Virus record (IMG/VR): IMGVR_UViG_3300024252_000004
Location: 62,001-126,000 of that record
Strand: one strand, 5' to 3'
Length of the DNA stretch: 64,000 bases
Shown here: positions 16,925-60,462 of the stretch, one piece after another
Layout: each line of letters begins with the position of its first letter
How positions within the stretch are numbered: the first letter of the stretch is position 1
Notes under the pieces: generated by a model
Told to the model about the DNA's origin: nothing
Database searches by the model: none
Seen by the model: the letters and a program-made list of their open reading frames with translations, nothing else
Position numbers and translations under genes: made by a program

Positions 16925-17560
16925 ATGAAACATGTTGGCGGACACGAAGGCAAAACTTGGATAGATTATGGTGCCTTAAAAGCTTTGGTAGATAGATTTC
17001 AAAATGCCAAAACATTTATTGATATAGGTTGCGGTCCAGGCAAACAGGTTGAGGTGGCGAAGGCTTTGGGGCTATCTGCTATTGGGGTCGATGGAGATCC
17101 TGAGATGACAAAGTTGAAGCATGTTAATCTTTTTGATTTTTCTAAGAAAAAAGCAGCTAAAGATGATCTGCCATTTCTTCCGAAAAGAAAATATTTCGAC
17201 ATTGGGTGGTCAACAGAATTTCTCGAACATATTGATGAGAAATACATTGAGAATTTTATGCCATTATTTGCTTTGTGCAAAGTTGTGGTCATAACTCATG
17301 CAACTCCGGGTCAAAAAGGGCATCATCATGTCAATGAACAATTATTTCCTTATTGGAAAGATATATTTCATAGTTATGGCTTAAATGAAGATAAAGAACT
17401 CACAAAGCTTCTTCGGATTAAATCAACAATGAAACAGAAAAAGATTAACCACTTTGTAAAGTATAAGAAAGACGGTACACCAAAGGTTAAAAGGATCAAG
17501 TCATCCTTCATGGTAAAATCAGGAAGAGTATTTATAAACACAAAGTTAAAGGAGCTATGA
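16925..17560 (+). CDS. Class I SAM methyltransferase
   Basis: IDIGCGPG, GVDG, STEFLEHI, HATPGQKGHHHVNEQ. Confidence 0.75.
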   Translation: MKHVGGHEGKTWIDYGALKALVDRFQNAKTFIDIGCGPGKQVEVAKALGLSAIGVDGDPEMTKLKHVNLFDFSKKKAAKDDLPFLPKRKYFDIGWSTEFLEHIDEKYIENFMPLFALCKVVVITHATPGQKGHHHVNEQLFPYWKDIFHSYGLNEDKELTKLLRIKSTMKQKKINHFVKYKKDGTPKVKRIKSSFMVKSGRVFINTKLKEL

Positions 17561-44054: not shown

Positions 44055-44250
44055 AAAAGTTGTAGGAAGAATCAGGAGCGTCACATATTGTGAAGAAGAG
44101 GATGTTCTCGACTTCACAATAAGAGTGACTGACCCCAAGTTTAAGAAGAAGTTACTTAGAGATCTATCTCTTGCCGGTAAGATTAAGCTTGAGGGTGACA
44201 AAATTGTCTATATAGGCGATGAGAATGAGGAGAAAGATGCCGGTATATAA
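44047..44250 (+). CDS. Small hypothetical protein
   Basis: Likely start ATG 44047; coupled in operon. Confidence 0.55.
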   Translation: MSEKVVGRIRSVTYCEEEDVLDFTIRVTDPKFKKKLLRDLSLAGKIKLEGDKIVYIGDENEEKDAGI

Positions 44251-44527
44251 TTTCGTATGTGACAAGTGTGAAGCAGTATCCACTGAAGTTATGAGCATAT
44301 CAAGCTTCATGAAACAGCGGAGCAATCCTGAGGAGTGTTGTGAGTGTTCCGAAGGAAAAGTCTTGGTTTCCTTATCCCCTCCTACGGGCAGGATAGAGAA
44401 AAGGAAAGAAGATATTATACAAGAGATAGAGGACGAAGTACGAGAAATCGTAAAAAAGGTACGTGAGGGTGACGAAGCAGCCATCGAGGATGTGTACGGA
44501 CACCGCGAGAACCCATACAAAAAATGA
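44237..44527 (+). CDS. FmdB-family zinc-ribbon protein
   Basis: MPVYNFVCDKC...CCEC; GAGGAG RBS. Confidence 0.8.
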   Translation: MPVYNFVCDKCEAVSTEVMSISSFMKQRSNPEECCECSEGKVLVSLSPPTGRIEKRKEDIIQEIEDEVREIVKKVREGDEAAIEDVYGHRENPYKK

Positions 44528-46455
44528 CTAACGGAGAACAGATGACATCAGCAGATTCATTACTTGAGCTTGTAAGTTCCCACATGGAGCAGAGTAAGCA
44601 GGAAGCATGGGAAGGTACCCTTGGAGAGTACTTAAAGATGGTGGTCGATGACCCATCTATTCACATGGGAGCACACGAACGAGTTCTTAGAATGATTGAG
44701 AGCCATGGTTTTGAGACGGACGAAGAAGATGAGGTAACTCAGTATAATTTCTTCAAAGATGACCTATTCGGTGTGCAGGATCAGATCGAAGAGTTTATGA
44801 AGTACCTTAGGGCTGCCGCAGCAGGCAGTGAAGTCGGTCGTAGAATCCTTCTTGTATACGGACCAACATCATCCGGCAAGTCCCAACTGGCCATCCTTTT
44901 GAAGAGAGGGCTTGAGGCTTTCTCCAAGACAGAGGACGGTGCATTATACGCATTCTCCGATTCGCCGATGAACGAAGATCCAATGACGGCAATCCCTATG
45001 GAGCTTAGAGGTAGGCTGCGTGAGGAGTATGGTATTCGCGTCCAGGGAGAACTATCTCCCTACATGGAGGCTATTCTTAAAGAGAAGTATGGTGGAAACA
45101 TCATGGAGCTACCGGTTCGTAGGATTTTCATCTCCGAAAGGGCAAGAAACTGCATTGGTACTTTCGTACCTTCCGATAAGAAGAGTCAGGATATCTCTGA
45201 GCTTGTTGGCTCCATTGATCTTAGTAAGATTGGTAAGTACGGCACAGAGTCTGACCCAAGAGCTTACAAGTTCGATGGCGAACTCATGGTTGCTAACCGT
45301 GGCATGATGGAATTTGTTGAGATGCTCAAGGTTGATCAGAAGTTCCTTTACGTTCTTCTCACCCTTGCTCAGGAAAAGAACATCAAGACCGGAAGGTTCC
45401 CGCTTATCTATGCGGACGAATTTGTTCTCGCTCACACTAACGAGACTGAGTACAAGAGATTCCTTGGGAAAGATGAGATGGAGGCACTCCATGATAGAAC
45501 TATTGTTCTACGATTCCCATACAACCTCAGTGTCAATGAGGAAGTAAGGATTTACGAGAAGCTCATTCGTCAGGCGAATTTCAAGGGTGTTCACATTGCA
45601 CCACATACGTTAAGGTGCGCAGCAATGTTCTCTATCCTTTCGAGACTAATTGAATCTGACCACCAGGGGCTTAGCACTCTGAACAAGATGAGACTATACA
45701 ACGGTGATGAGGTTGATGGATTCTCTAAGCACGAAGTACCTAAGTTCAAGGGAGAATTCAAAGATGAAGGAATGGTTGGAGTATCTCCACGATACGTTAT
45801 CAACAGAATCTCTTCCATCCTTGCTTCTGGCAAGAAGGGTTACATCACTCCGGTTGATATCGTAAGATCCCTTAGAGATGGGCTTGAATCTAACCCTAAG
45901 GTTGACGAGAAAGAACAGAACAGATTAGAGGGTATCCTTACTGCTGTAATTGAAGAATACACCAAGATGGCAATGAACGATGTTCAGAAGGCATTCTTCG
46001 TTAACTTCGAGAGCGAGATCGAAAACCTTCTCAAGAACTACCTTGACCATGTTGAGGCATACCTTGACGGTCATATGCTTGAGGATGAGTGGGGCAATGA
46101 TGTTCAGCCAGATGAGAGACTCATGAGAAGCGTCGAAGAGAAGATTAGAATCTCCGACTCTGGCAAGAGATCTTTCAGGCAGGAAGTGTATCGTAAGATG
46201 CTTCGTTCGGCAAGAGATAACGATGGTACCCTTTCCTACAAGGAGCACCCAAGACTCAAGGAAGCGCTTGAGAAGCAGCTTTTTGACGAGAGACGTGACG
46301 TTATCAGAATCACTGTTAGTTCCAGAAACCCAGATGAGGAAGAGCTTAAGAAGATCAATGTTGTCATCGAGACCCTTGCGGACCATCACGGTTACACTGT
46401 CGGAAGTGCCAACGAATTGCTTAGATACGTTAGCTCACTTATGGCAAGAAACTAA
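44524..46455 (+). CDS. prkA: PrkA/YeaG-family AAA+ protein
   Basis: DDLFG, YGPTSSGKS, IGTFVPSDKKSQD, DPRAY, ANRGMMEFVEMLK, HIAPH, GVSPRY. Confidence 0.93.
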   Translation: MTNGEQMTSADSLLELVSSHMEQSKQEAWEGTLGEYLKMVVDDPSIHMGAHERVLRMIESHGFETDEEDEVTQYNFFKDDLFGVQDQIEEFMKYLRAAAAGSEVGRRILLVYGPTSSGKSQLAILLKRGLEAFSKTEDGALYAFSDSPMNEDPMTAIPMELRGRLREEYGIRVQGELSPYMEAILKEKYGGNIMELPVRRIFISERARNCIGTFVPSDKKSQDISELVGSIDLSKIGKYGTESDPRAYKFDGELMVANRGMMEFVEMLKVDQKFLYVLLTLAQEKNIKTGRFPLIYADEFVLAHTNETEYKRFLGKDEMEALHDRTIVLRFPYNLSVNEEVRIYEKLIRQANFKGVHIAPHTLRCAAMFSILSRLIESDHQGLSTLNKMRLYNGDEVDGFSKHEVPKFKGEFKDEGMVGVSPRYVINRISSILASGKKGYITPVDIVRSLRDGLESNPKVDEKEQNRLEGILTAVIEEYTKMAMNDVQKAFFVNFESEIENLLKNYLDHVEAYLDGHMLEDEWGNDVQPDERLMRSVEEKIRISDSGKRSFRQEVYRKMLRSARDNDGTLSYKEHPRLKEALEKQLFDERRDVIRITVSSRNPDEEELKKINVVIETLADHHGYTVGSANELLRYVSSLMARN

Positions 46456-46808
46456 TGTTCTTCGGCATCATGAAGAATGAGGTTACCTCGGCGCCAGTAG
46501 AGGCGCTGAGGGAAGCCCTTACCGATGAGTTTGGTGACGACATTAGATTTTCTCAAGGTGTTCTGCTTGTTGCTTGCTCATTAGAGTTTGCGGCGAATCC
46601 CATGAGGACCAGAATCGTGTATGCAAAAGATCCTGATGGTGAGTTTGACGCGATGGTTAAAGAGGCTGTTGAGCGGATTATGTTTGAAGTGAAAAGCTCA
46701 GAGACAGATCTTTCTGATTATGAATTCTCGCTTTCTTGTTTGCCGTGTGAAGAGGCAGATTCCCTTTCGATTGGATTCGTACTTTGGGTTAATGGATGTT
46801 GTAAGTAA
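46455..46808 (+). CDS. Hypothetical protein
   Basis: TAATG-coupled to PrkA. Confidence 0.55.
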   Translation: MFFGIMKNEVTSAPVEALREALTDEFGDDIRFSQGVLLVACSLEFAANPMRTRIVYAKDPDGEFDAMVKEAVERIMFEVKSSETDLSDYEFSLSCLPCEEADSLSIGFVLWVNGCCK

Positions 46809-46820
46809 CATGGGAAGATT

Positions 46821-47171
46821 ATGAATATATTGAAAATATATGCTATGATAAAACAAAGGCTGGAGAATTTAAAACTTTCCGAGGATTTCTTTACGCTTGA
46901 TAATGTTCCTTTGGAGGCGCTCCCTATATATCTAGGGCAAAGTTTCAATGGATATAGTAATGAGGATGGAAGCTTTTCTTTCCAAAATAGCTTCATTGAT
47001 ATCATAGAACTTGGGCAACCATTTAGTACAGATGAAACCGAAGAGGAGACTGTGAATCGTTTGGTATCTTTTCTCAAAGAGTACCGTGCAGAACTTGGGC
47101 AAGACCCGTTTCAGTTGGTTATATCTGTTAAAGATACGAAAGATTGTTACGGAATCTTAGCTGTACATTAA
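46821..47171 (+). CDS. Hypothetical protein
   Basis: 116-aa in-operon ORF. Confidence 0.55.
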   Translation: MNILKIYAMIKQRLENLKLSEDFFTLDNVPLEALPIYLGQSFNGYSNEDGSFSFQNSFIDIIELGQPFSTDETEEETVNRLVSFLKEYRAELGQDPFQLVISVKDTKDCYGILAVH

Positions 47172-47184
47172 ACCAGGAGAAGTA

Positions 47185-47295
47185 ATGACTATTATAATTA
47201 ATTATGGAAAAAGTACATTTATAGAGTCTGATGCTTATGAAGATGAAAATCAAAACCATGATACAATAAGAATAGTGTCTGGTATGGAGGAGTAA
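47185..47295 (+). CDS. 36-aa small protein (MTIIINYGKSTFIESDAYEDENQNHDTIRIVSGMEE)
   Basis: Hand-translated; GGAG RBS upstream; fills the gap before YeaH; not in the ORF track. Confidence 0.45.
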   Translation: MTIIINYGKSTFIESDAYEDENQNHDTIRIVSGMEE

Positions 47296-47296
47296 A

Positions 47297-48466
47297 ATGT
47301 CTGATAGTCTTTCTGATATTTGGAAACTGAAGAAACGTGGTAAAAGAGATTCTGATCGACATGAAGAGCTTGTCAAAAGAGCAATCAGAAAGCATGGGCG
47401 AGACGTAATCACAGAGTATAACATCATTCGTTCTTCAGGCTCCAAGAAAGTTAAGATTCCTGTAAGGTTTCTTGATAAGCATACGTTCAAATATGGAAAA
47501 TGGAAAGATGACTCTCAGGTTGGTCAAGGTCAGGACGTAGTCCCCGGAAAAAACTATGAAGTTAAGAAGGGACAAGCTGCTCCTGGCGGCCCAGGAGACC
47601 AAGAGGGCGAGAGAATTTTTGAAGCTGAAATCTCTGTAGATGAGTTGGTCAACATGCTAATGGAAGAGTTAAATCTTCCATGGATGGAGCCAAACAAGTC
47701 CAGTCAGATTGAAGTAGTTCATGAAGAAGTTTCGTCAATCGATAGAAAGGGAATCTTCCCAAATCTTGACATCAAAAGAACTCTCCTTCAGAACATCAAA
47801 AGGAATGCTGCGCTTGGAAATCCACACGTTGGAGATTTTCATAACGAAGACCTCAGATATAAGGTGTGGGAAGAGGAGACTGAGTACGTCTCAAATGCTG
47901 CGGTCTATATCATGATGGATAGATCTGGCTCTATGGATGACAAGAAGACCTATATTGCTAAGAGCTTCTACTTCTGGATGGTTCAGTTTCTAAAAAGACG
48001 TTATCAAAATGTTGAGTTAATCTTCATTGCTCATGATACAACTGCATTTGAAACTACAGAAGAAGAGTTCTTTACGATTTCGGCAAGCGGTGGAACTAAG
48101 TGCAGTTCTGCATTCAAGTTCGCTCTTGATCATATCAAGAATAACCATCCGCCAGATGATTGGAACAATTACGTTTTTGAGTTCAGCGATGGCGACAACT
48201 GGATGCAGGATAACAGAGAGTGCGTAGGTCTTGTAAGGGAGCTATTGCCTTTATGCACTGCAATCGGGTATGGTGAAATTGTGCCGGACGAGCAAGCGGA
48301 GCTACCTTGGTTCAAGGAAGAAGATAAGCTTTACAACGTGTTCAATAATGAGATTTCAAGAACGCGATTTGTATCCTTAAGAGTTAACTCTAAAGATGGC
48401 GTTTTCGATGCTCTAAAGCAATTCTTTAACGTTAATGGTGTGTCAAAAAAGGCTGAAAAGAAATGA
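47297..48466 (+). CDS. yeaH: YeaH/YhbH-family (DUF444) vWA protein
   Basis: RDSDRH, PGDQEG, EDLRY, MMDRSGSM, FIAHDT, GGTKCSSA, EFSDGDNW. Confidence 0.93.
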   Translation: MSDSLSDIWKLKKRGKRDSDRHEELVKRAIRKHGRDVITEYNIIRSSGSKKVKIPVRFLDKHTFKYGKWKDDSQVGQGQDVVPGKNYEVKKGQAAPGGPGDQEGERIFEAEISVDELVNMLMEELNLPWMEPNKSSQIEVVHEEVSSIDRKGIFPNLDIKRTLLQNIKRNAALGNPHVGDFHNEDLRYKVWEEETEYVSNAAVYIMMDRSGSMDDKKTYIAKSFYFWMVQFLKRRYQNVELIFIAHDTTAFETTEEEFFTISASGGTKCSSAFKFALDHIKNNHPPDDWNNYVFEFSDGDNWMQDNRECVGLVRELLPLCTAIGYGEIVPDEQAELPWFKEEDKLYNVFNNEISRTRFVSLRVNSKDGVFDALKQFFNVNGVSKKAEKK

Positions 48467-51036
48467 AAAAAAGATTAATCGAAGTAGACAAATGGTGTCA
48501 GAAGAAGTGTGATGAGATGGGCGTAGATTATTTTCCAATCAATTGGGAAGTTGTGCCTGAAGAGGTCATGCTTGAGGTAATGAGCTATGGTCTTCCGACC
48601 AGAGCACGACACTGGACATACGGTCAGAGTTACAAATACCAGAAGCTTAATGGTGAAATGGGTATGTCAAAGGTTTACGAGCTAATCCTTAACAACAATC
48701 CATCTTATGCTTTCCTTCTTGATACCAACCCTGACATTGCACAGATTATGGTCATCGCTCACTGTGTCCATGAGGATGCTAAAATTATTACTTTGGATGG
48801 AGTAAAGCCCATCTCTGAAGTAAAAAAGGGCGATAAAGTATTTACACATAAAGGTAGAATTTCTACTGTTAACTGGTGTAAAGAGACTGCAAGAAAAAAA
48901 GAAATTACTGAATTGAAAGTAAGGGGTTCCGATGAGGTTTATAGGTTTACATCTGATCATAAGATTTATGTAGAAACTGATGTTGGCCCATCTTGGGTAA
49001 AAGTTTCTGAAATAAGGGAAGATGATAGAATCATTTACCCTAAGGCTTCTCAGAACGAGGAGTCTGCTCTCGAAGAGATTTTAATTGAAATCGAAAATAT
49101 TCAGAGTAATGATAGGCTGTTTAGGAAAAAAGCTTTCCATGAAAGCAATGGATATACTTTAAAATTAAATGAAGAATCCGGAAGGATGATCGGGCTATAT
49201 ATTGCTGAAGGCTATCTTAGCGGAACACAAGTTCATTTTGCGATGCACAAGGATGAAGACGATTATCATGCAGCAATTTCAAATGCAATTAATCAGTTAT
49301 CTCCGAAACTTCCTGTACATGTATCCAAAAGAGAGCGTGATAATTCTGGCATTGTTCATTTTTCTGACAAATGGATTGGAAAATGGCTTGAAGAAAGCTG
49401 TGGGAAAGGTTGTGAGAACAAGAAGATACCTGATTTTGTATTTGCAAACAATGTTCCTCTTGAGTTTAAAAAGGGAATTGTAAGAGGGCTTTTCGAAGGT
49501 GATGGTTATTTTGATAATGAAAATAGAAGCTCTTCTTTTTCTACCACAAGCGATCTGCTTGCAAATCAGTTAAAATTTCTTCTGAATTCATTTGGAATTT
49601 TTTCATCTATTTCTTCAAGAAACAGGAAATCTTTTGATATAAAGGGGGAAAGAAAAACTTCTTATGAATTGGTTTTAAGTGGCGAAGACAACTTGGAGTT
49701 ATATAACATAGTTGGATATGAGACTGAATATGCTCCGACCAGAACTTGGTCTTTCTCTGCAAAGAAAGATGAATATATAGCTGGACAAATCGAATGGGTT
49801 CGCTCATTCTCTACAGAAAAGATTCAAAGTTTTTGGGACATGGAAGTGGAAGGAGATCATAGCTTTGCGCTATATGGCGGAATTGTAGCTCATAACTGTT
49901 ACGGACACAGCGCATTCTTCAAGAATAACTACCTATTCAAGCAGACAGACAGGAAGATGGTTTACCATGCTGCTGAACGTGCTGCAAGAATCGAAGGCTA
50001 TATTGAGAGGTATGGTTTAGAAAGAGTTGAACGCATCATGGATATTGGTCTCTCCGTTGAGAAGAATATTGATTGGCATAAAGGTTTATTCCGTGAGAAA
50101 TACCCTGGCAGAAGAAAGGTGGTCAAGAGTCGTAAGATTGGTGAATTCGAAGATGTACTTGGAATCAAAAGTCCAGAGAGAAAAGAGGTAACGGTTAACA
50201 CGAAGTTCCCACCTGCAAAAGAGATTGATATCAACTGGTTCTTGATGACTTACTCTTCTAAGCTTGAAGATTGGGAGCGTGATGTCCTCTCTATTATCCG
50301 AGAAGAATCCTTTTACTTCTACCCTCAGTACATCACAAAGATTATGAACGAAGGCTTTGCAAGCTATATTCATGCAGAACTCATGTATGTCATGGGCGAG
50401 GAGATGCTTTCCGCAGCAGAGTATATTGATTTCGTTAAGATTCATGAGAGAGTTGTTCAGCCAGGACGTGATCCATTCAATATGAACCCATACTTCTTAG
50501 GCTTTACGATTTTCAACGACATTAAGAAAAGATGGGATGAGCTATACGAGAAAGGTGAGTCAACCATTACAGGTTTTCAGAAGATTCTTGAGGTATGCGA
50601 GGAAGAAGATGATGTATCATTCTTGAACATCTACCTCACTCAGGAGATTGTTGATGAGCTTAAGATGTTCACCTATGTTCAGAGAAGGGACCCGAGAAGT
50701 AAAAACCAATACGTTCAGGTTCAGAGCAATAAGGTTAAGGACATTGTTGAGTCAATGACCAGCAAGCTTCATAACTACAGAGTTCCTATGATTGCGATTA
50801 CTAACGTAACATCTATGAGTCTTGAGCTTGAGCATGGAAGCCCAGAGATTGGAACGATTGCTTATAAGCATCTTCCAAAGGTTATGGAGTATCTATATGA
50901 GGCATGGGGCAATGTGATTGACCTGAAGACGTGGGACACGTCAGGCAATCCATTCCACTTCACTTTCGATGAGGAAGGTTTCAGTGATGTCGATCCAGAA
51001 AAAGGTCTCACAATTATTAGAAGGAAACAAAAGTAA
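48463..51036 (+). CDS. spoVR: SpoVR/YcgB-family protein containing an intein
   Basis: GLPTRARHW, YELILN, AH|CYGHSAFFKNN after splicing, TKIMNEGFASY, NPYFLGF. Confidence 0.92.
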   Translation: MKKRLIEVDKWCQKKCDEMGVDYFPINWEVVPEEVMLEVMSYGLPTRARHWTYGQSYKYQKLNGEMGMSKVYELILNNNPSYAFLLDTNPDIAQIMVIAHCVHEDAKIITLDGVKPISEVKKGDKVFTHKGRISTVNWCKETARKKEITELKVRGSDEVYRFTSDHKIYVETDVGPSWVKVSEIREDDRIIYPKASQNEESALEEILIEIENIQSNDRLFRKKAFHESNGYTLKLNEESGRMIGLYIAEGYLSGTQVHFAMHKDEDDYHAAISNAINQLSPKLPVHVSKRERDNSGIVHFSDKWIGKWLEESCGKGCENKKIPDFVFANNVPLEFKKGIVRGLFEGDGYFDNENRSSSFSTTSDLLANQLKFLLNSFGIFSSISSRNRKSFDIKGERKTSYELVLSGEDNLELYNIVGYETEYAPTRTWSFSAKKDEYIAGQIEWVRSFSTEKIQSFWDMEVEGDHSFALYGGIVAHNCYGHSAFFKNNYLFKQTDRKMVYHAAERAARIEGYIERYGLERVERIMDIGLSVEKNIDWHKGLFREKYPGRRKVVKSRKIGEFEDVLGIKSPERKEVTVNTKFPPAKEIDINWFLMTYSSKLEDWERDVLSIIREESFYFYPQYITKIMNEGFASYIHAELMYVMGEEMLSAAEYIDFVKIHERVVQPGRDPFNMNPYFLGFTIFNDIKKRWDELYEKGESTITGFQKILEVCEEEDDVSFLNIYLTQEIVDELKMFTYVQRRDPRSKNQYVQVQSNKVKDIVESMTSKLHNYRVPMIAITNVTSMSLELEHGSPEIGTIAYKHLPKVMEYLYEAWGNVIDLKTWDTSGNPFHFTFDEEGFSDVDPEKGLTIIRRKQK
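48763..49896 (+). mobile_element. Intein (378 aa) with LAGLIDADG homing endonuclease in SpoVR
   Basis: Starts CVHEDAKII, ends IVAHN followed by Cys; IGLYIAEG and RGLFEGDG blocks. Confidence 0.92.
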
Positions 51037-51539
51037 TGACTGAACCTGTTGTAGATTTTGCATATCAATTATCCGTATCGCGTGAACGAATTGAGAAAAG
51101 AGTTTTTCAGAACCTCCGCAATATCTCAGAAGAGCTATTGATGAAGGATGAATTCGTAGGATCCCTTATTGTATTTGGAGTTTTTAAAACCCAAGTCGAC
51201 GGGATGAGACAATTCGGAGGAAGCAAGCTTGAAAAATACATCAATGTTGTTGGTGCTCACGAAGAGGAGTTCATTAACATGGTGCGGAGTGGTGATGATG
51301 GAGCAATTGTTATCAGCGATAGTGGGCAGATACTAGGATCTGGTATATATTTAACCGTGGACGATCCCACCTTAGACATCCCCGAGGGGGCAGGCACCAG
51401 ACATATCTCTGCTGCCTCATTCTCCAAGCGGGATGATATATTAGCTACCTTTACATTGTCCGAAGAGACGCGCATCGTGCGAAAATGGAAAGACGGTGCT
51501 GTGAACGAACAGTTCGATCCTTCAGACGATCAAGAGTAG
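51036..51539 (+). CDS. Stand-alone diadenylate cyclase (DAC/DisA_N) domain protein
   Basis: DDGAIVI (DGA), GAGTRHISAA (RHR-like), LSEET motifs. Confidence 0.82.
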   Translation: MTEPVVDFAYQLSVSRERIEKRVFQNLRNISEELLMKDEFVGSLIVFGVFKTQVDGMRQFGGSKLEKYINVVGAHEEEFINMVRSGDDGAIVISDSGQILGSGIYLTVDDPTLDIPEGAGTRHISAASFSKRDDILATFTLSEETRIVRKWKDGAVNEQFDPSDDQE

Positions 51540-51562
51540 TTGACCTTATTTTTAAGGAAAGG

Positions 51563-51586
51563 GCCGCCCAAGTTGGGTGGCTTTTT
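51563..51586 (+). terminator. Intrinsic terminator after the DAC gene
   Basis: GCCGCCCA-AGT-TGGGTGGC followed by TTTTT. Confidence 0.7.
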
Positions 51587-51806
51587 CAACTTTTATTAGA
51601 GAAGAATAGTCAGATTTGTAGAGACAAAAACATATCCAAATTGTTTGATTCGCAAAAAGATTTGGATTTGAATATATGAAAACAGATTCCTTAAAGGGCC
51701 TTGCAACCAGCTTTTCATATACCCAAACTCTATTAATCTTGGCAGTGTAAGTGCTACAATGAGCACGATACCAATGAGAATTTTATGATGTAGGAGTACT
51801 GTTTTA

Positions 51807-54800
51807 ATGTTTATTCAAAATATCTCTCAAGAAGTATGGGGCGGAGAAGCTGGTAAGTATAGGCTTCGTGATTCCGAAGGACAACCCATCGATCTAACAC
51901 CTGAAGACACCTGTTTGAGAGTCGCAAAAGGGTTAGCATCACTTGAGCCAAAACCAGAAGAATGGGAAGTTGAGTTTTCCAGAATTCTATTAGAAGGTAA
52001 GTTCGCAGGTGGCGGACGTATTATGGCCAATGTCGGCGCTGGCGACCTCAAGCGAGACGCCAGCCCGATTAACTGTACGGTGCTCAGGCAGATCCCTGAC
52101 TCGATGGATGGCATCATGCAGACCGCCAAAGAATCTGCGATGACACTGCGCACAGGCGCTGGTGTGGGCTATGATTTCAGCCCAATTAGGCCAAGCGGCG
52201 CGTATGTATTTGGCGCAGGAGCAGAGACTTCTGGCGTCATTTCTTTTATGAAAATCTTCGATGCAACGTGCAGCACAGTTATGAGCGGCGGTGGCAGACG
52301 TGGAGCCCAAATGGGTTGCCTCGACATTCAGCATCCAGAGATTGAGAATTTCATCACTTGTAAAAGAGAAGATGGCGTTCTTAGATATTTTAACTTATCT
52401 GTTTTAATCACAGATGCTTTCATGACGGCTGTTAGAGATGATGCCATGTGGAAGCTATGGTTCTGGGAGCGTTGCGAGAAATGTGACATAGAGGAAATTG
52501 GTGCAGATGAGGTTGCAGTGATGAAAGCTGGAGATATCCCTTTCAGATATCCTGAATACGATTACTTCAGTTATGCAGCAGATCACACTGAAGTCCTTAG
52601 CGGTAACTGCGAAGTAGGAACTATCTTTAAGAAGAGAGTATTCAAGGTGCTTAGAGCCGTTGAACTCTTTGATAAGATTATGACATCAACATACAATTTC
52701 GCCGAGCCTGGATTCATTCTTATCGATAGGGTGAACAGAGATAATATCCTTTGGTTCTGTGAAGTTATTAGAGCTACGAATCCATGTGTACCTTCTGATA
52801 CCTGGGTTCATACAGAAGAAGGCCCGAAGCAGGTTTCCGATCTTATAGGTCAAGAATGCACCTTGATGGTGAACGGAAAGCCATATCAATCAGAAGGATT
52901 TTTTAAAACCGGATATAAATCGGTTTTGAATTTAGAAACCAAAGAAGGCTTCAAATTAAGATTAACTCCTAATCATAAAGTTATGGTAGTAAGCTCCAAT
53001 AATGGTGATAAAATTATTTCCAATTGGAAAGAAGCAGGCGAAATTGAGATTGGTGATAAAGTTATTCTTCATGATCATAGTGATTCTGCTTACTGGTTAG
53101 GAACAGACAAAATGAATGGAGTCTACTCTGTAGATCAGGGATACCTGATGGGGCTACTCGTTGGGGACGGAACGCTGAAGAAAGATTCTGCTATCCTGTC
53201 CGTTTGGAGTTCTGACAATGAAAATGGTTATGAGTCTATTATGTCTCGTGTAAATATGTCGATAAGACACCTTAAGAAAAGAGCAGATTTTAAGGGTTGG
53301 CACAAAATAGCTGGCCGAAATGAGTATAGGCTTAAGTTGTCTGGAATAAGAGATTTGGCGCATGAATTTGGAATGAGCAATCAAAACAAGTTTATTACTC
53401 CTAAAATGGAGAAAGCATCTCATGCCTTTTCTGCCGGGTTCTTAAGGGGGCTTTTTGATGCAGATGGCTCGGTCCAAGGCGATCAAAGCAAAGGAGTTTC
53501 TGTAAGGCTTGCTCAAAGTAACTTAGAGACCTTGGAAGCTGTGCAAAGAATGCTTCTTAGATTTGGAATCGTATCTAAGATTTACAAATTCAGGCGAGAA
53601 AGTGGAGAGTCACTTTTGCCTAACGGGAAAGGTGGAAAGAAACTTTATAAGACAAAAGCTCAGCACGAATTAGTTATTAGCAAAAGTAATTTAAAAACTT
53701 TTGAGAGATTGATTGGCTTTGCTGATGACACTAAGCATTCTAAATTAGTAAACTTATTAAGTGACTACAAAAGAGAATTAAACAAAGAAAGTTACGCAGT
53801 AACGATATCATCAATTAGTGACGGAGGCATTTGCGACGTTTATGACGTACAGGTTCCAGGTATAAACGCTTTTGATGCAAACGGCATTTATGTTCATAAT
53901 TGTGGCGAACAGCCTTTACCTGCCAATGCAAGTTGCCTATTGGCTTCAATGATTTTAGCTCCATATGTGATGAATAAATTTGCGGATGATTCCTTTTTTG
54001 ATTGGGAGGCTTTCGAAGTAGATATTGCTGTCGCTACAAGGATGATGGACAACGTTGTTGAGATCAACAACCTGCCTCTGCCTGAAATGAGAGAGCAGAT
54101 TCTCCAGAAGAGAAGGCATGGCTTAGGCTTCACAGGTCTTGGCACTGTATTTAACATGCTCGGCATGTCTTATGGTGATGATGCTTCTCAGGCGTTCGCA
54201 GATAAGATTGCATACACGATTGCAAAAGTATCTCTATTTATGAACATGGAGCTTGCGCAAGAGAAAGGACATGCTCCCATTTTCGACACGATAGTGTCCA
54301 GACAGAACGCTATTGATTCAGGATATATGAAGAGGTTGTTATCAACCTTTGATGACGATTTAAGGCATGGATTAGAGCAGGAGATTCTTGAGCATGGTCT
54401 CAGATTCTCTCACGCTACCAGCATTGCACCAACAGGAACCATGAGTTTAACTTGGGGTAACAACTGTAGCAATGGTGTTGAGCCGAGCTTCACTGATGAG
54501 TACGCAAGAAACTTCAGGCAGCATGGAAAGAAGACGAAGGTTCAGGAAATCGTAAGAAGTCTTGAATACCATCTATGGATAGAGATGTATGGTGACAGAG
54601 AGCTACCAAGTCATTGGAGGGTTTCCAATGACCTATCTGTCGAAGATCATATCAACATCCAGGCAAAGATTCAGAAGTGGGTTGACTCTGCCGTATCTAA
54701 GACGGCAAATGTTCCTACTGATTACCCATTCGAGGATTTCAAAAAGATCTACATGATGGGATGGGAGAAGGGGCTTAAGGGCATCACCACCTTCAGGTAT

Positions 54801-54989
54801 AATCCTGAGGCGTTTTCAGGTGTCCTTGTTCGCAAAGAGGATCTCGAAAATACGAAATACGTTTTCATCCTCGCAGATAATGAAGAAATAACAGTATCCG
54901 GAAGTGATACAATTGAGTACGATGGTGAGCTTCACAATGCGGCCAATTTGTTTGATGCGCTGAAAGAAGGCATGTATGGGGATATGTAA
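51807..54989 (+). CDS. nrdJ: Class II (B12-dependent) ribonucleotide reductase NrdJa with intein
   Basis: GGRIMAN, INC, GGRRGAQM, EPG, TNP|CGEQPL, RHGLGFTG, IAPTGT, KGITTFR. Confidence 0.93.
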   Translation: MFIQNISQEVWGGEAGKYRLRDSEGQPIDLTPEDTCLRVAKGLASLEPKPEEWEVEFSRILLEGKFAGGGRIMANVGAGDLKRDASPINCTVLRQIPDSMDGIMQTAKESAMTLRTGAGVGYDFSPIRPSGAYVFGAGAETSGVISFMKIFDATCSTVMSGGGRRGAQMGCLDIQHPEIENFITCKREDGVLRYFNLSVLITDAFMTAVRDDAMWKLWFWERCEKCDIEEIGADEVAVMKAGDIPFRYPEYDYFSYAADHTEVLSGNCEVGTIFKKRVFKVLRAVELFDKIMTSTYNFAEPGFILIDRVNRDNILWFCEVIRATNPCVPSDTWVHTEEGPKQVSDLIGQECTLMVNGKPYQSEGFFKTGYKSVLNLETKEGFKLRLTPNHKVMVVSSNNGDKIISNWKEAGEIEIGDKVILHDHSDSAYWLGTDKMNGVYSVDQGYLMGLLVGDGTLKKDSAILSVWSSDNENGYESIMSRVNMSIRHLKKRADFKGWHKIAGRNEYRLKLSGIRDLAHEFGMSNQNKFITPKMEKASHAFSAGFLRGLFDADGSVQGDQSKGVSVRLAQSNLETLEAVQRMLLRFGIVSKIYKFRRESGESLLPNGKGGKKLYKTKAQHELVISKSNLKTFERLIGFADDTKHSKLVNLLSDYKRELNKESYAVTISSISDGGICDVYDVQVPGINAFDANGIYVHNCGEQPLPANASCLLASMILAPYVMNKFADDSFFDWEAFEVDIAVATRMMDNVVEINNLPLPEMREQILQKRRHGLGFTGLGTVFNMLGMSYGDDASQAFADKIAYTIAKVSLFMNMELAQEKGHAPIFDTIVSRQNAIDSGYMKRLLSTFDDDLRHGLEQEILEHGLRFSHATSIAPTGTMSLTWGNNCSNGVEPSFTDEYARNFRQHGKKTKVQEIVRSLEYHLWIEMYGDRELPSHWRVSNDLSVEDHINIQAKIQKWVDSAVSKTANVPTDYPFEDFKKIYMMGWEKGLKGITTFRYNPEAFSGVLVRKEDLENTKYVFILADNEEITVSGSDTIEYDGELHNAANLFDALKEGMYGDM
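52785..53900 (+). mobile_element. Intein (372 aa) with LAGLIDADG endonuclease at the RNR NP-C-GEQ active-site cysteine
   Basis: Starts CVPSDTWV, ends IYVHN followed by Cys; GLLVGDG and RGLFDADG blocks. Confidence 0.93.
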
Positions 54990-58418: not shown

Positions 58419-58719
58419 TATCAAATATGAGAAGACAATCACCGAAGCTGTAGAGGAGATCAATGAAAGAAAGACCTCCGGCAAAAAGGTGCATCCCTTA
58501 ACGGAAGAGGGCATGAAGGCTATTGATGTGGCGAACATGATAGTGGGAACCATCATGAAAAGAAACCAACCTGATGTTAGTTTCTTCAAGGTTTACATGA
58601 ATAGCACGAATGACAGGTTGGGTAAAATGTCAGGCAAGAAAAAAGCGGCCAACGAGGGCCGCAAATCTCTTAGAAGGAAGCGTTCAAATCGTGTAAACGA
58701 TAGTAAGGACTCCTCCTGA
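58405..58719 (+). CDS. Hypothetical basic protein
   Basis: 104-aa ORF overlapping the upstream stop. Confidence 0.55.
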   Translation: MAEHDIKYEKTITEAVEEINERKTSGKKVHPLTEEGMKAIDVANMIVGTIMKRNQPDVSFFKVYMNSTNDRLGKMSGKKKAANEGRKSLRRKRSNRVNDSKDSS

Positions 58720-59595
58720 ATCTGGAATGTCCGTAAGAACGACAGCGTTTCTATTTTCGTCGTATCTCCAGTGATCATATTCAGTAGAGTTGCTTCCATC
58801 TTCGCTTAAGAACACTTTAAGCTTATCAATCTGAAGAGGAAGGTGATCAAGGTGCCATACCTCATTAAGGGTTGGCAAGTGCTCCTTAGGTCTATCAAGA
58901 ACGGCAGACCAATCTTCATCACAAAGATCTACGACAGTTTCTGATACATCAAGGTATCCTACGCCCAACTGAGCAGAGTCACAACGATTACCTTCATAGG
59001 TAGCAACGATTGCCGACTCGGTAACCTCAAAGGGGCCTGATTTTACAAGGTCCATTAGGGTGTTGTATTCTGTTGGAGAGACAGAGGACTGGTCGGGTTC
59101 ATCGCTGATGTATACAATAAGGAGATCAGCTTCTTCTCTTTCAAAACCAGAGTTATCCCACGCTACAGTCTCAAGAGCACTGTCGAGCCCTGCCTCTCTG
59201 TAATGATTTTCAAGAAGAGAGGTCAAAGACATAAGCTTCAGGAGAGCATCAGGATCGTTGTAATCAACCCAGCCATAGATTTCTCCAGCGGAGTCGGTAG
59301 ATTTGATTCCTACTCTCCACTTGAGGTCAGTGAATTCGGGACCAATAAGGATACTATATATCTCTGGCATAGTTGCAGCTAAGGTTTCCCAGTCATCACT
59401 CATTGAACCTGATTCGTCAACGATGAATAGAATATCTACTGCTTGATCATAGACCACACCAGTTTGAACAATAGGTTCTCCGTAGATGCTTACGTCTTCA
59501 GTGTAATTGGCTACAACGCCAATGTCTGAAGAGCAAGAGGTTAGTGTCATTGCTGCACATAGTGCTAATCCATATAGCTTTAGTTTGCCGAACAT
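58684..59595 (-). CDS. vWA (MIDAS) domain lipoprotein
   Basis: Lipobox-like MTLTSC; DILFIVDESGSMS; VYISDEPDQS. Confidence 0.8.
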   Translation of the reverse strand: MFGKLKLYGLALCAAMTLTSCSSDIGVVANYTEDVSIYGEPIVQTGVVYDQAVDILFIVDESGSMSDDWETLAATMPEIYSILIGPEFTDLKWRVGIKSTDSAGEIYGWVDYNDPDALLKLMSLTSLLENHYREAGLDSALETVAWDNSGFEREEADLLIVYISDEPDQSSVSPTEYNTLMDLVKSGPFEVTESAIVATYEGNRCDSAQLGVGYLDVSETVVDLCDEDWSAVLDRPKEHLPTLNEVWHLDHLPLQIDKLKVFLSEDGSNSTEYDHWRYDENRNAVVLTDIPDSGGVLTIVYTI

Positions 59596-59607: not shown

Positions 59608-60462
59608 TCATTTTATGTTGTTTCGCTCAAGAAATATCAAAATGTCAGGCATTCCGATTCCTAACCCTCCGTATGAGAACATGACAGAGTTTTGACCAAC
59701 TCTATCTCTCACCGAAGAAGCAAAGGAAATACCAACAAGTTCTCCTCTTTTGTTGTAGATGGGACTACCACTATGTCCCGGTTGTAACATTTCGGATACC
59801 ATAAGGGCACCCTGTTCTCCTTCACCTAAACTGCCTAACTGAGAACGAGGAACATATCCCGAAAAGAATGTTTCCAAAATGATTGGTGCATTAGAATTAG
59901 GTGCTCCAACGATGTACAGTTTTTCAGCAACATCTAATTTTGTGTCTTTATCGATTTTAACTATTGGGTGCGAGCCATCTGCTTTTAATAGACACAAATC
60001 GTTAGCAGGATCTTTATCCACGACAGTCATCTGCATGTCTGGTTTTCCATCATATCTGAACGAAGCCTGAGAGTCATTTAACTTTTCCCCTACAAAAGTA
60101 ATACCCAAAATAGGCATGCTACAAATATGGTCATTTGATAAAAAGTAAGTTTCATCTGCTTTTTTATCATAAGCGATGCCAAAGGCAGTGCCACTACTCT
60201 GCACCTGTGAGCCGCTCAATGTATAGATGACCACAACAGGCTCCACCATTCTTTTGTAGTTTTTCTTAACAGACACTTCTTCAGTTTTGCTATCTGAGGA
60301 GTAAAGTTCGGCTATTGGCCTATCGTTCACCATGATCATGTTTTGGGGACTTGCTACGAAGTAACATAGTAGTGTCAGTGCCAAAAACAGAGCGAGGAAT
60401 TTTGCGTTTTTCAATTTGATTCCTTTATATTTTTTCCACGTTTTCTTATTCGGTATGTTCAA
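59608..60462 (-). CDS. Membrane-anchored trypsin-like serine protease
   Basis: N-terminal hydrophobic helix; triad SNDHIC (H), ANDLC (D), PGHSGSP (S). Confidence 0.85.
   Translation of the reverse strand: MNIPNKKTWKKYKGIKLKNAKFLALFLALTLLCYFVASPQNMIMVNDRPIAELYSSDSKTEEVSVKKNYKRMVEPVVVIYTLSGSQVQSSGTAFGIAYDKKADETYFLSNDHICSMPILGITFVGEKLNDSQASFRYDGKPDMQMTVVDKDPANDLCLLKADGSHPIVKIDKDTKLDVAEKLYIVGAPNSNAPIILETFFSGYVPRSQLGSLGEGEQGALMVSEMLQPGHSGSPIYNKRGELVGISFASSVRDRVGQNSVMFSYGGLGIGMPDILIFLERNNIK

What the first reader, a model, noticed from the sequence alone, without database searches (positions are those of the whole stretch)
44524..51586. Phage-encoded PrkA(YeaG)-YeaH-SpoVR(YcgB) triad coupled to a diadenylate cyclase
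Seen: prkA, three small ORFs, yeaH, spoVR and a DAC gene are co-oriented, several junctions overlap by ATGA/TAATG, and a terminator follows DAC. Known: yeaG-yeaH-ycgB is a conserved bacterial AAA+/vWA/SpoVR trio tied to stress, stationary phase and sporulation (Bacillus prkA, yhbH, spoVR); it is normally chromosomal. Inference: the phage carries a complete dormancy/stress-control module linked to c-di-AMP signalling, possibly to steer host development or proteostasis during infection. The DAC association is not a standard arrangement to my knowledge.
Basis: partly seen in the sequence, partly recalled or inferred. Interest (0 to 1): 0.8.

Follow-up and report, generated by a model that had tools for sequence, protein, structure and literature searches.

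The report
Jumbo-phage PrkA–YhbH–SpoVR module with diadenylate cyclase
A group of very large marine phages carries a complete bacterial stress-response gene trio (PrkA, YhbH/YeaH, SpoVR) followed directly by a small enzyme that should make the signalling molecule c-di-AMP; no such enzyme turned up in any phage catalogue or paper I could search, but nothing yet shows that the trio and the enzyme work together.

Summary
Window 44219-51587 encodes, on the + strand with overlapping start and stop codons, a Zn-ribbon protein, PrkA, three small ORFs, YhbH/YeaH, SpoVR and a 167-aa DAC-domain protein, followed by a strong terminator.

- SpoVR is split by a 378-aa intein carrying a LAGLIDADG endonuclease, which looks able to splice.
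- The small ORFs are specific to this genome.
- A conserved Zn-ribbon gene precedes prkA.

The window comes from a 395-kb IMG/VR contig found in many seawater metagenomes, and its gene content is phage-like.

The PrkA–YhbH–SpoVR–DAC order recurs in about 15 distinct relatives. Their contigs are 300-420 kb, with PrkA identity down to 57% and DAC identity down to 41%. These relatives form one PrkA clade, and the flanking DnaB, RNR and PhoH genes are just as conserved in position. The linkage is therefore one ancient event, not repeated evidence of coupling.

No DAC lies near the trio in 80 cellular loci, in about 25 other viral loci, or in Thermus phages.

The DAC has the CdaA/DacZ fold and keeps the DGA motif, the active-site Tyr and SEET. 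Its RHR motif reads RHI in every family member.

The trio in phages was already annotated (phiYS40, RsoM2USA, PHROGs). I found no phage DAC in GenBank phages, PHROGs, BFVD or the literature searched. The host and the mechanism remain inferred.

The parts
44219..44527 (+). FmdB-like CxxC..CxxC zinc-ribbon protein (102 aa as called; the start is probably M7 at 44237). Its stop overlaps the prkA start (ATGA).
   Evidence: Pfam Zn_ribbon_8 and NCBIfam TIGR02605, both weak. It is conserved directly upstream of prkA in every clade relative, at 24-75% identity. It is absent upstream of cellular prkA in 80 loci.
44524..46455 (+). PrkA/YeaG-family AAA+ protein (643 aa). Walker A motif GPTSSGKS at aa 113; invariant LAH(T)NE at aa 302.
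   Evidence: PF08298 1.1e-110 and PF06798 2.7e-70; phrog_22605; PDB 9xip 'Serine protein kinase' E 5e-130; motifs.
46455..47295 (+). Three acidic small ORFs (117, 116 and 36 aa) filling the prkA|yeaH junction. They are specific to this genome.
   Evidence: No Pfam, PHROG, PADLOC or NCBIfam hit. No tblastn match in any other locus. One weak match only: o116 against a 130-aa ORF at the same junction in L039, E 6e-4. In relatives this junction is empty or holds unrelated ORFs.
47297..48466 (+). YhbH/YeaH (DUF444) vWA-type protein (389 aa). MIDAS motif DRSGS at aa 208.
   Evidence: PF04285 1e-88. Best NCBIfam match is TIGR02877 spore_yhbH, 382 bits, below its cut-off of 468. phrog_19072.
48463..51036 (+). 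SpoVR/YcgB-family precursor (857 aa): N-extein 48463-48762, intein 48763-49896, C-extein 49897-51033.
   Evidence: PF04293 2.8e-94 in two stretches. Relatives without the intein are 460-480 aa and align continuously across the junction.
48763..49896 (+). Class-1 intein (378 aa) with a LAGLIDADG homing endonuclease, inserted inside the invariant SpoVR motif AH|V(I/L)GH.
   Evidence: Pfam Intein_splicing, LAGLIDADG_3 and Hint_2; TIGR01443 intein C-terminus. Read from the sequence: Cys1, a TxxH block (TSDH), two LAGLIDADG-type motifs, terminal HN and a +1 Cys.
51036..51539 (+). Stand-alone minimal diadenylate-cyclase-domain protein (167 aa): an N-terminal helix followed by the DAC domain. Motifs: DGA at 88-90, Y105, TRH-I at 121-124, SEET at 142-145.
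   Evidence: PF02457 44.2 bits against a cut-off of 27. AF2 model pLDDT 73; Foldseek top 50 hits are all CdaA/DacA/CdaM/DacM/DisA, probability 1.0. Best NCBIfam match is DacZ, E 3e-14. Family alignment A1.
51557..51587 (+). Intrinsic-terminator-like hairpin closing the block (14-bp stem, T-run).
   Evidence: sequence read. L138 has an equivalent hairpin of different sequence after its DAC gene. In L038, L039 and the P0136 contig a sigma-70-like gene follows the DAC gene instead.

Best explanation
This is a vertically inherited gene block of one clade of marine jumbo phages (contigs of 300-420 kb). It sits among replication and nucleotide-metabolism genes, in the order DnaC, DnaB, block, RNR, PhoH.

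The block encodes two things.

(i) A complete PrkA–YhbH–SpoVR trio of the type seen in Bacillota, Chloroflexota and Acidobacteriota, plus a clade-specific Zn-ribbon protein. By analogy with B. subtilis PrkA (an ATP-dependent Lon-like protease) and with the cofitness of yeaG, yeaH and ycgB, I infer an ATP-driven protein-remodelling or proteolysis/signalling machine. In it the vWA protein would act as adaptor, and SpoVR, a His/Glu-rich orphan fold, as the third subunit.

(ii) A minimal DacZ-like diadenylate cyclase that lacks every regulatory domain. I expect it to dimerise and make c-di-AMP constitutively once expressed.

The block is probably transcribed as one unit, given the overlapping start and stop codons and the terminator after the DAC gene. 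SpoVR would need protein splicing to become functional.

The likely outcome is that the phage installs its own starvation/proteostasis controller and also raises, or newly introduces, c-di-AMP in the infected cell. Together these would reset host stress, osmotic and K+ physiology during a long jumbo-phage infection.

Shown here: gene identities, intact motifs, the DAC fold, conservation across the clade, and a single origin of the linkage. Inferred: enzymatic activities, co-transcription, any joint action of the DAC and the trio, and the host.
For: - Identities and motifs.
- Viral, recurrent genome. Phage-like neighbours (DnaB, DnaC, helicases, PhoH, lysozyme, TubZ-like, RNR with intein, dUTPase).
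- PrkA–YhbH–SpoVR–DAC order in about 15 distinct relatives, with a spoVR→DAC gap of -37 to +77 nt in 14 of 15.
- The clade is monophyletic in the PrkA tree (SH-aLRT 100). Its nearest cellular PrkAs are Laceyella, Ktedonobacterales and Pyrinomonadaceae at 46-50% identity.
- DAC family invariants: D88, G89, Y105, G120-T121-R122-H123, S142, E143 (A90 and E144-T145 in at least 90% of members).
- In the DacM structure, the first Arg of RHR and the Asp and Gly of DGA contact the ATP ribose, and these are retained here.
- PrkA is an ATP-dependent protease (PMC9512850).
- Conserved cofitness of yeaG, yeaH and ycgB (10.1101/072470).
- The trio entered phages more than once (Thermus phages, RsoM2USA and IMG/VR loci of YeaG type, and this clade), which argues that it is useful to phages.
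Against: - No activity, expression or interaction data exist. No RNA run was listed.
- The DAC–trio adjacency is a single evolutionary event inside a collinear block. Insertions occur at every junction, including spoVR|DAC.
- The canonical RHR motif reads RHI in all family members. Only triple RHR→AAA mutants have been tested in the papers read, so cyclase competence is not assured.
- The host is unknown, so it is unknown whether the host uses c-di-AMP.
- SpoVR has no structural neighbour in the PDB, so its role is a guess.
- Capsid and terminase genes are not inside the 64-kb window.
Confidence: 0.45

Rival explanations
1. The DAC works independently of the trio. It would be a host-takeover or counter-defence enzyme that floods the cell with c-di-AMP, for example to shut K+ and osmolyte uptake or to disturb nucleotide-based signalling. 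It sits beside spoVR only because the whole region is collinear in this clade.
For: - The linkage arose once, and the flanks are equally syntenic.
- Extra genes separate spoVR from the DAC gene in L057 and in the P0136 contig.
- In most relatives the DAC gene is followed directly by, or overlaps, a sigma-70-like gene rather than a terminator.
- The nearest cellular relative seen is a stand-alone archaeal-type DAC with no trio nearby.
- Cellular trios, Thermus-phage trios and YeaG-type viral trios all lack a DAC.
Against: - Co-occurrence is 100% in both directions in every clade contig examined.
- The two genes overlap or abut in the window, L138, L139 and L047.
- There was no PADLOC hit, though that library holds bacterial defence systems, not phage counter-defence proteins.
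Confidence: 0.35
2. The DAC-domain protein is not a c-di-AMP synthase. Because of the invariant RHR→RHI change, it would make a different nucleotide product, or act only as an ATP- or c-di-AMP-binding regulatory subunit or sponge.
For: RHI is invariant in 22 of 22 family members. The RHR motif is described as essential. Sequence similarity to characterised DACs is low, with PDB phmmer E 0.004 and about 20% identity.
Against: The residues reported to contact substrate are all kept: DGA Asp and Gly, the first Arg of RHR, and the active-site Tyr. The SEET motif is also kept; from my own recollection of CdaA structures, not checked in a paper here, it supplies the metal-binding Glu. Strong purifying conservation of these motifs fits catalysis. 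The mutants tested in the literature were triple alanine substitutions, not the third Arg alone.
Confidence: 0.12
3. The phage trio serves virion assembly or maturation, for example as an AAA+/vWA chaperone for head or tail proteins, and not host reprogramming.
For: In Thermus phages Lalka27b and phiYS40 the vWA–SpoVR–PrkA genes lie between the portal and minor-head genes and the terminase.
Against: In this clade the block lies among replication and nucleotide-metabolism genes (DnaC, DnaB, RNR, PhoH, dUTPase), not structural genes. The Thermus-phage copies are a separate, long-branched lineage.
Confidence: 0.08
4. The region is cellular DNA, either a mis-binned bacterial contig or an assembly chimera, and not phage-encoded.
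For: No capsid or terminase gene lies inside the 64-kb window. The window also holds a large sugar-biosynthesis island that looks cellular.
Against: - The contig is an IMG/VR UViG of 395 kb.
- Relatives all fall in a 300-420 kb size class.
- The same sequence was assembled without differences from several seawater runs.
- The genes are dense, co-oriented and mostly ORFans, with phage lysozyme, PhoH, a TubZ-like protein, intein-bearing RNR and DnaB/DnaC, and no tRNA genes or Rfam RNA-family matches in the window.
Confidence: 0.03

Closest known systems
Bacterial prkA–yhbH–spoVR (yeaG–yeaH–ycgB) operon
   Same: The same three Pfam families in the same order, with an intact Walker A motif and MIDAS motif. 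It is nearest to the Bacillota/Chloroflexota/Acidobacteriota subtype: PrkA 46-53% identity, and YhbH best matches TIGR02877.
   Different: Here it is phage-borne, preceded by a clade-specific Zn-ribbon gene, and followed by a DAC gene that 80 cellular loci lack. SpoVR is interrupted by an intein. NCBIfam equivalog cut-offs are not reached.
Phage copies of the trio: Thermus phages phiYS40, TMA, Lalka, MN1 and phiLo; Ralstonia jumbo phage RsoM2USA; PHROGs 22605, 19072 and 35217
   Same: Phage genomes encoding PrkA together with a vWA/DUF444 protein and SpoVR.
   Different: These are separate lineages in the PrkA tree. In Thermus phages the gene order differs (vWA–SpoVR–PrkA) and the genes lie next to portal and terminase. 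None has a DAC within 7-10 kb, and tblastn with the DAC finds nothing in 50,697 GenBank phage records.
Diadenylate cyclases DacZ (archaeal), CdaA/DacA, CdaS, CdaM and DisA
   Same: The DAC fold (Foldseek probability 1.0, TM about 0.6), with the DGA motif, the active-site Tyr, the Arg-His of RHR and SEET all present. Best profile match is DacZ. Structural neighbours in the Atlas are DacZ-type DACs.
   Different: Only 167 aa long. It has no transmembrane helices (CdaA, CdaM), no HhH domain (DisA) and no DacZ N-terminal regulatory domain. The third residue of RHR is Ile in the whole family. It is encoded by a virus.
AAA+ ATPase / vWA-MIDAS partner systems (MoxR–vWA such as RavA–ViaA, CbbQ–CbbO, BchI–BchD); named from my own knowledge, not tested here
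   Same: An AAA+ ATPase gene followed by a vWA/MIDAS-protein gene and a third, client-like component. This suggests an ATP-driven remodelling machine.
   Different: PrkA is a distinct AAA+ family with its own C-terminal domain and reported protease or kinase activities. No structural or sequence link to these systems was tested.
SpoVR-like intein of Chloroflexus aurantiacus J-10-fl (InBase)
   Same: An intein inside a SpoVR-family protein, mentioned in 10.1101/2025.01.02.630785. A Chloroflexota MAG (L064) also has inteins in SpoVR and PrkA.
   Different: The window's intein is in a phage copy, at the AH|V site. Relatives carry inteins at two other SpoVR sites and in PrkA. I did not establish the insertion site of the Chloroflexus intein.

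Membership tests
PrkA/YeaG family (PF08298 + PF06798) | N-terminal PrkA-type AAA domain and C-terminal PrkA domain, both above Pfam gathering scores | tested here: met
   370.6 and 237.4 bits against cut-offs of 25.
PrkA/YeaG family (PF08298 + PF06798) | Walker A P-loop with the Lys needed for ATPase and protease activity (K108 in B. subtilis PrkA) | tested here: met
   GPTSSGKS at aa 113-120. G113, P114, K119 and S120 are invariant in alignment A2. The role of the Lys comes from PMC9512850.
PrkA/YeaG family (PF08298 + PF06798) | NCBIfam equivalog of E. coli YeaG (NF011999) | tested here: not met
   289 bits against a cut-off of 576. It is a family member, not an equivalog of YeaG.
PrkA/YeaG family (PF08298 + PF06798) | ATP-dependent protease or kinase activity | not testable with these tools
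   Needs biochemistry.
YhbH/YeaH (DUF444, vWA-like) | DUF444 above the gathering score, with a MIDAS DxSxS motif | tested here: met
   298.7 bits against a cut-off of 27. DRSGS at aa 208. TIGR02877 scores 382 bits, below its equivalog cut-off of 468.
SpoVR/YcgB (PF04293) | SpoVR domain above the gathering score, with the family's invariant motifs AHVxGH..FF.NN and NEGxA..H | tested here: met
   316.6 bits in two stretches. The motifs are present. The first is split by the intein and reads AH-CYGH after the predicted splicing.
Conserved three-gene operon prkA–yhbH–spoVR | The three genes adjacent and co-oriented | tested here: met
   This order is found in the window and in all clade relatives, though variable small ORFs or homing-endonuclease-like genes sit at the junctions.
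Diadenylate cyclase (DAC/DisA_N, PF02457) | DAC domain above the gathering score, and the DAC fold | tested here: met
   44.2 bits against a cut-off of 27. Foldseek top 50 hits are all CdaA/DacA/CdaM/DacM/DisA, probability 1.0.
Diadenylate cyclase (DAC/DisA_N, PF02457) | DGA motif | tested here: met
   D88 and G89 are invariant and A90 is conserved in at least 90% of the 22 family members.
Diadenylate cyclase (DAC/DisA_N, PF02457) | RHR motif | tested here: not met
   It reads R122-H123-I124 in all 22 members. The first Arg, the one reported to contact the ribose in DacM, is kept, and so is the His. The effect of losing the third Arg alone is not known from the papers read.
Diadenylate cyclase (DAC/DisA_N, PF02457) | SEET motif (the metal-binding Glu of CdaA, by my recollection) and the active-site Tyr | tested here: met
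   S142, E143 and Y105 are invariant, and E144 and T145 are conserved in at least 90% of members. They align with the SEET and YL motifs of CdaA. The Tyr is reported as essential.
Diadenylate cyclase (DAC/DisA_N, PF02457) | Synthesis of c-di-AMP from ATP | not testable with these tools
   Needs an enzyme assay.
DacZ subclass (NF041371) | Equivalog score, and an N-terminal DacZ regulatory domain before the DAC domain | tested here: not met
   52.9 bits against a cut-off of 430. The match covers only profile positions 121-268 of 270. The phage protein has just a helix of about 36 aa before the domain.
CdaA, DisA and CdaS subclasses | Three N-terminal transmembrane helices (CdaA), a C-terminal HhH DNA-binding domain (DisA), or two N-terminal autoinhibitory helices (CdaS) | tested here: not met
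   The protein is 167 aa with a single charged N-terminal helix at aa 8-36 and nothing after the DAC domain. DisA NCBIfam scores 16 bits against 201.
Class-1 intein with LAGLIDADG homing endonuclease | Cys/Ser1, a TxxH block B, terminal His-Asn, a +1 Cys/Ser/Thr, and a LAGLIDADG domain | tested here: met
   C101, TSDH...VAHN478 and C479. PF14890 scores 39.5 against 35.8, PF14528 scores 56.9 against 22.5, and TIGR01443 scores 18.8 against 15.6. Splicing itself was not tested.
Phage genome (Caudoviricetes, jumbo) | Capsid, portal and terminase genes on the contig | not tested
   Only 64 kb of the 395-kb contig was readable, and none of these genes lies in it. The support is indirect: IMG/VR membership, phage lysozyme, tail-fibre-like PHROG hits, PhoH, DnaB/DnaC, a TubZ-like protein, and the size class of the relatives.

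The most novel reading that the evidence does not exclude
c-di-AMP made by the phage DAC is the dedicated input signal, or allosteric ligand, of the PrkA–YhbH–SpoVR machine in these phages. In that case the block would be a self-contained 'signal generator plus effector' cassette. It would also expose, for the first time, what kind of small-molecule cue controls this widespread but still unexplained bacterial trio.
Probability: 0.1. Interest if true: 0.85.

Novelty: new variant of a known kind. Interest (0 to 1): 0.6.

Why it matters
The PrkA/YeaG–YeaH–SpoVR/YcgB trio is found across many bacterial phyla and some archaea, and it has conserved cofitness, yet its biochemical function is unresolved. 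In addition, SpoVR's predicted fold has no counterpart in the PDB.

Phages appear to have captured the trio more than once, which suggests it controls something that matters for infection. A phage version that is compact and can be expressed in the laboratory gives a workable system for finding its substrates.

The DAC family described here (at least 192 proteins, all of those examined lying on jumbo-phage-like marine contigs) is the first virus-encoded diadenylate cyclase I could find in any catalogue or paper searched. If it is active, c-di-AMP would be one more second messenger that viruses make themselves. That bears on osmoregulation in infected marine bacteria and on nucleotide-based immunity.

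The intein insertion points (AH|VxGH, GH|x and NEGFA| in SpoVR; LAH|(S/T)NE in PrkA) also mark the probable active-site motifs of these proteins.

Tried and rejected
- Megablast of the 7-kb block against 50,697 GenBank phages: no match.
- tblastn of the DAC against the same set: no match.
- The DAC has no PHROG family, and BFVD holds no protein with the DAC fold.
- PADLOC defence models: nothing except the intein's homing endonuclease, so I dropped a defence-system reading of the trio.
- Rfam scan of the window, looking for a c-di-AMP (ydaO) riboswitch or any other RNA: no hits.
- RNA-seq runs holding the DAC/SpoVR region: none was listed, so expression and operon structure could not be checked.
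- Laying contigs from four seawater runs found no intein-less allele and no joint.
- AF2 model of an intein-less SpoVR (pLDDT 89) against the PDB: no meaningful neighbour, best E 0.09 and TM at most 0.12. A sequence-profile search of the PDB also found nothing for SpoVR or YhbH.
- The small ORFs o117, o116 and o36 have no family hits and no relatives. I treat them as ORFan fillers of a variable junction, not as parts of the module.
- Host identification failed. There are no tRNAs in the window, the helicase's closest cultured-phage relatives are only about 33% identical (Bacillus phage G), and the taxon labels in the Atlas are mixed.
- An apparent in-frame stop in the L006 prkA gene turned out to be a coordinate artefact upstream of the true start.
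- Literature searches for a phage DAC, c-di-AMP with jumbo phages, PrkA with jumbo phages, and a paper for PDB 9xip returned nothing relevant.
- A caveat on the 'no DAC near cellular trios' test: it used an HMM built from the phage family (E ≤ 10 on a few thousand ORFs), and I had no canonical CdaA sequence for a positive control. From the 17-20 bits seen against PDB CdaA, such a gene should have been detected.

Full report
**What is there**

On the + strand between 44219 and 51587 lie eight tightly packed ORFs:
- a 102-aa FmdB-like Zn-ribbon protein, 44219-44527
- PrkA, 44524-46455, 643 aa
- three acidic small ORFs of 117, 116 and 36 aa, 46455-47295
- a DUF444/vWA protein, YhbH/YeaH, 47297-48466
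- an 857-aa SpoVR-family ORF, 48463-51036
- a 167-aa DAC-domain protein, 51036-51539

The junctions Zn-ribbon|prkA and yeaH|spoVR overlap as ATGA. The junctions prkA|o117 and spoVR|DAC overlap as TAATG. A hairpin with a 14-bp stem and a T-run follows at 51557-51587. The Pfam assignments are unambiguous.

The genes look functional. PrkA has the Walker A motif GPTSSGKS and the invariant LAH(T)NE and GMMEFVEM motifs. YhbH has the MIDAS motif DRSGS.

SpoVR is nearly twice its normal length because a 378-aa intein sits at aa 101-478 (window 48763-49896). The junctions read ...MVIAH|C...VAHN|CYGH.... The intein has Cys1, a TxxH block, two LAGLIDADG-type motifs, a terminal His-Asn and a +1 Cys, so it looks competent to splice.

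Relatives without the intein read AHV(I/L)GHxHFFKNN at this point. The intein therefore lies inside one of the most conserved SpoVR motifs.

The three small ORFs have no family hits and no counterparts in any related locus. In relatives this junction is empty, or holds unrelated ORFs or DUF7487 genes.

The Zn-ribbon gene is conserved directly upstream of prkA throughout the clade. It was absent from all 80 cellular prkA loci examined.

**Origin of the DNA**

The window is identical to part of IMGVR_UViG_3300024252_000004, a 395,127-bp contig. At least 14 seawater metagenome runs hold more than 90% of the block's sampled words. Contigs from four of those runs cover 46000-51700 with no differences and no joints.

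Phage-like genes in the window:
- DnaC-like loader and DnaB
- two further helicases
- a DNA methyltransferase and a dCMP deaminase
- an RNR large subunit carrying its own intein
- PhoH, a LysM-lysozyme and dUTPase
- a TubZ/PhuZ-like tubulin
- a protein with tail-fibre PHROG hits

Most of the remaining genes are co-oriented ORFans, and there are no tRNA genes and no Rfam RNA-family matches.

The first 24 kb is a glycan-synthesis island that includes KdsA- and KdsB-like genes. I take this, as my own inference, to suggest a Gram-negative host. No capsid or terminase gene falls inside the 64 kb I could read, so the viral assignment rests on these indirect grounds and on IMG/VR.

**How widespread the arrangement is**

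Three searches recovered about 15 distinct related genomes:
- a scan of IMG/VR with PrkA
- a scan of IMG/VR with a DAC alignment
- look-ups of DAC homologues

The longest contigs are 305-420 kb.

Wherever upstream sequence exists, the order is DnaB, two small ORFs, Zn-ribbon, PrkA, YhbH, SpoVR, DAC. Next comes a sigma-70-like gene in most relatives, though not in the window's subclade. RNR, PhoH and lysozyme follow.

PrkA identity to the window falls to 57% and DAC identity to 41%. The spoVR→DAC gap is -37 to +77 nt in 14 of 15 loci and 703 nt in L057. A more distant member, the P0136 contig, has two small ORFs between the two genes.

**Why this is still weak evidence of coupling**

In a PrkA tree of 108 sequences the DAC-bearing phages form one clade (SH-aLRT 100). 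Their nearest neighbours are a groundwater MAG contig, then Laceyella, Ktedonobacterales and Pyrinomonadaceae.

The other IMG/VR loci with the trio fall inside the proteobacterial YeaG-type clade, and the Thermus phages form a third, long branch. An HMM of the phage DAC family finds no DAC within 7-10 kb of prkA in any of these loci, nor in the 80 cellular loci.

The DAC–trio adjacency therefore arose once. It has been inherited inside a block whose flanks are just as conserved in position. Mobile elements and ORFans have been inserted at every junction of the block. Conservation within one collinear clade counts as a single observation.

**The DAC**

The protein passes the Pfam threshold. Its best NCBIfam match is archaeal DacZ, far below the equivalog cut-off and covering only the catalytic part. 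An AF2 model (pLDDT 73) hits only CdaA, DacA, CdaM, DacM and DisA in the PDB, with probability 1.0.

In a 22-member family alignment, these features are invariant or conserved in at least 90% of members:
- the DGA motif
- the Tyr that stacks on adenine
- G-T-R-H
- S-E-E-T

The third residue of the canonical RHR motif, however, is Ile in every member.

In the DacM structure the first Arg of RHR contacts the ribose. The only mutants in the papers I read are triple RHR→AAA substitutions. I therefore consider activity likely but unproven.

The protein has one charged N-terminal helix and no regulatory, membrane or DNA-binding domain.

The family has at least 192 members at 90% clustering. Only 17 representatives reach E ≤ 1e-30 at 50% clustering. 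One of the nearest hits outside the clade, and the only one whose context I examined, is a 175-aa stand-alone DAC on an archaeal-looking 599-kb contig with no trio nearby.

No DAC was found in GenBank phages, PHROGs or BFVD. No paper on a phage DAC turned up.

**The trio**

YeaG, YeaH and YcgB show strong, conserved cofitness in several bacteria (10.1101/072470). B. subtilis PrkA is an ATP-dependent Lon-like protease whose Walker A Lys is needed for sporulation (PMC9512850).

A close PrkA homologue now has solved structures, PDB 9xip, 9xiq and 9xir (E 5e-130). I found no accompanying paper.

An intein-less clade SpoVR gave a confident AF2 model (pLDDT 89) with no structural neighbour in the PDB. 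Its invariant residues are mostly His, Glu and Asn.

Inteins occupy three SpoVR sites (AH|V, GH|V and NEGFA|) and at least one PrkA site (LAH|(S/T)NE) in relatives and in a Chloroflexota MAG. This fits the known preference of inteins for active-site motifs. A SpoVR-like intein in Chloroflexus is on record.

**Most likely mechanism**

The block is a host-takeover cassette, probably co-transcribed. It provides the infected cell with two things. One is a phage-controlled AAA+/vWA/SpoVR remodelling or proteolysis system. The other is an unregulated c-di-AMP synthase. Together they would shift host starvation, proteostasis and osmotic/K+ physiology during a long jumbo-phage infection.

Joint action of the DAC and the trio is possible; I put it at about one in four. 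The leading rival is that the DAC acts on its own and is adjacent only by descent.

**Novelty and score**

The trio in phages is already annotated: phiYS40, RsoM2USA, and PHROGs 22605, 19072 and 35217. The DAC family, its fixed place next to the trio in a marine jumbo-phage clade, and the intein-split phage SpoVR are new as far as I could search.

I rate the finding a new variant of a known kind, with interest 0.6.

Noticed in passing
window 1-24000: A large glycan-biosynthesis island. It holds KdsA-like (5068-5847) and KdsB-like (5847-6647) genes, GDP-mannose 4,6-dehydratase (17557-18531), an epimerase (20018-20995), UDP-glucose dehydrogenase (19164-20015), GT2-, GT8- and GT29-like glycosyltransferases, a sulfotransferase (16299-16916) and a methyltransferase. 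This is unusual ballast for a phage. I take it to suggest a Gram-negative host.
   Followed up: partly
window 51807-54989: The ribonucleotide reductase large subunit (1060 aa) carries its own intein with an endonuclease, at about aa 328-698 (...ATNP|C ... VHN|C). The L038 orthologue (687 aa) has none. L139 and the P0136 contig also have RNR inteins.
   Followed up: partly
L045, L039, L050, L056, L064 and L111 (relatives): Inteins and insertions cluster in the trio:
- SpoVR at GH|V, four residues from the window's site (L045).
- SpoVR after NEGFA (L039, L050, L056, and Chloroflexota MAG L064).
- PrkA at LAH|(S/T)NE (L045).
- PrkA near residue 225 (L064, L111).
- DUF7487 genes inserted between prkA|yeaH and yeaH|spoVR in L039.
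These sites mark the likely catalytic motifs.
   Followed up: partly
L138:8568-10001 (intein-less SpoVR of the closest distinct relative): The AF2 model has pLDDT 89 and pTM 0.85, but no PDB neighbour (best Foldseek E 0.09). SpoVR therefore appears to be a fold with no solved relative. Its invariant residues are His-, Glu- and Asn-rich: H50, E73, H100, H104, E252 and H259.
   Followed up: yes
window 32843-34342: A TubZ/PhuZ-like tubulin: Pfam Tubulin and TubZ-like_C, with a weak hit to the PhuZ PHROG. Such proteins are known from nucleus-forming jumbo phages. I did not look for a shell protein.
   Followed up: no
L038 10533-11084; L039 10555-11091; P0136 contig: In most clade members a sigma-70-like protein (regions 4, or 2 and 4) is encoded directly after, or overlapping, the DAC gene. 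The window's subclade (window and L139, probably L138) lacks it. The window and L139 have a 60-64-aa ORF in its place, and the window and L138 have a terminator-like hairpin after the DAC gene.
   Followed up: partly
PDB 9xip, 9xiq and 9xir: Recently solved structures of a 692-aa 'Serine protein kinase' are close homologues of the phage PrkA (E 5e-130 over aa 27-642). No paper was found in the library.
   Followed up: partly
L140 8001-8528 (GCA_054040335.1, 599-kb contig): One of the nearest relatives of the phage DAC outside the clade, and the only one whose context I examined, is a 175-aa stand-alone DAC. It lies in an archaeal-looking neighbourhood (proteasome subunit, KH/beta-CASP nuclease, MutS/MutL) with no PrkA, YhbH or SpoVR nearby. 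This fits the DacZ-like profile match.
   Followed up: partly
L001 (Thermus phage Lalka27b) and L002 (phiYS40): In Thermus phages the trio is ordered vWA–SpoVR–(hypothetical)–PrkA. It lies between the portal and minor-head genes and the large terminase, a structural-gene context quite unlike the replication context in the marine clade.
   Followed up: no
window 58684-59595 and 59608-60462 (- strand): A pair of genes on the opposite strand encodes a weak vWA-domain protein and a trypsin-like peptidase. The pair is conserved at the same place in L038, L039 and L139.
   Followed up: no
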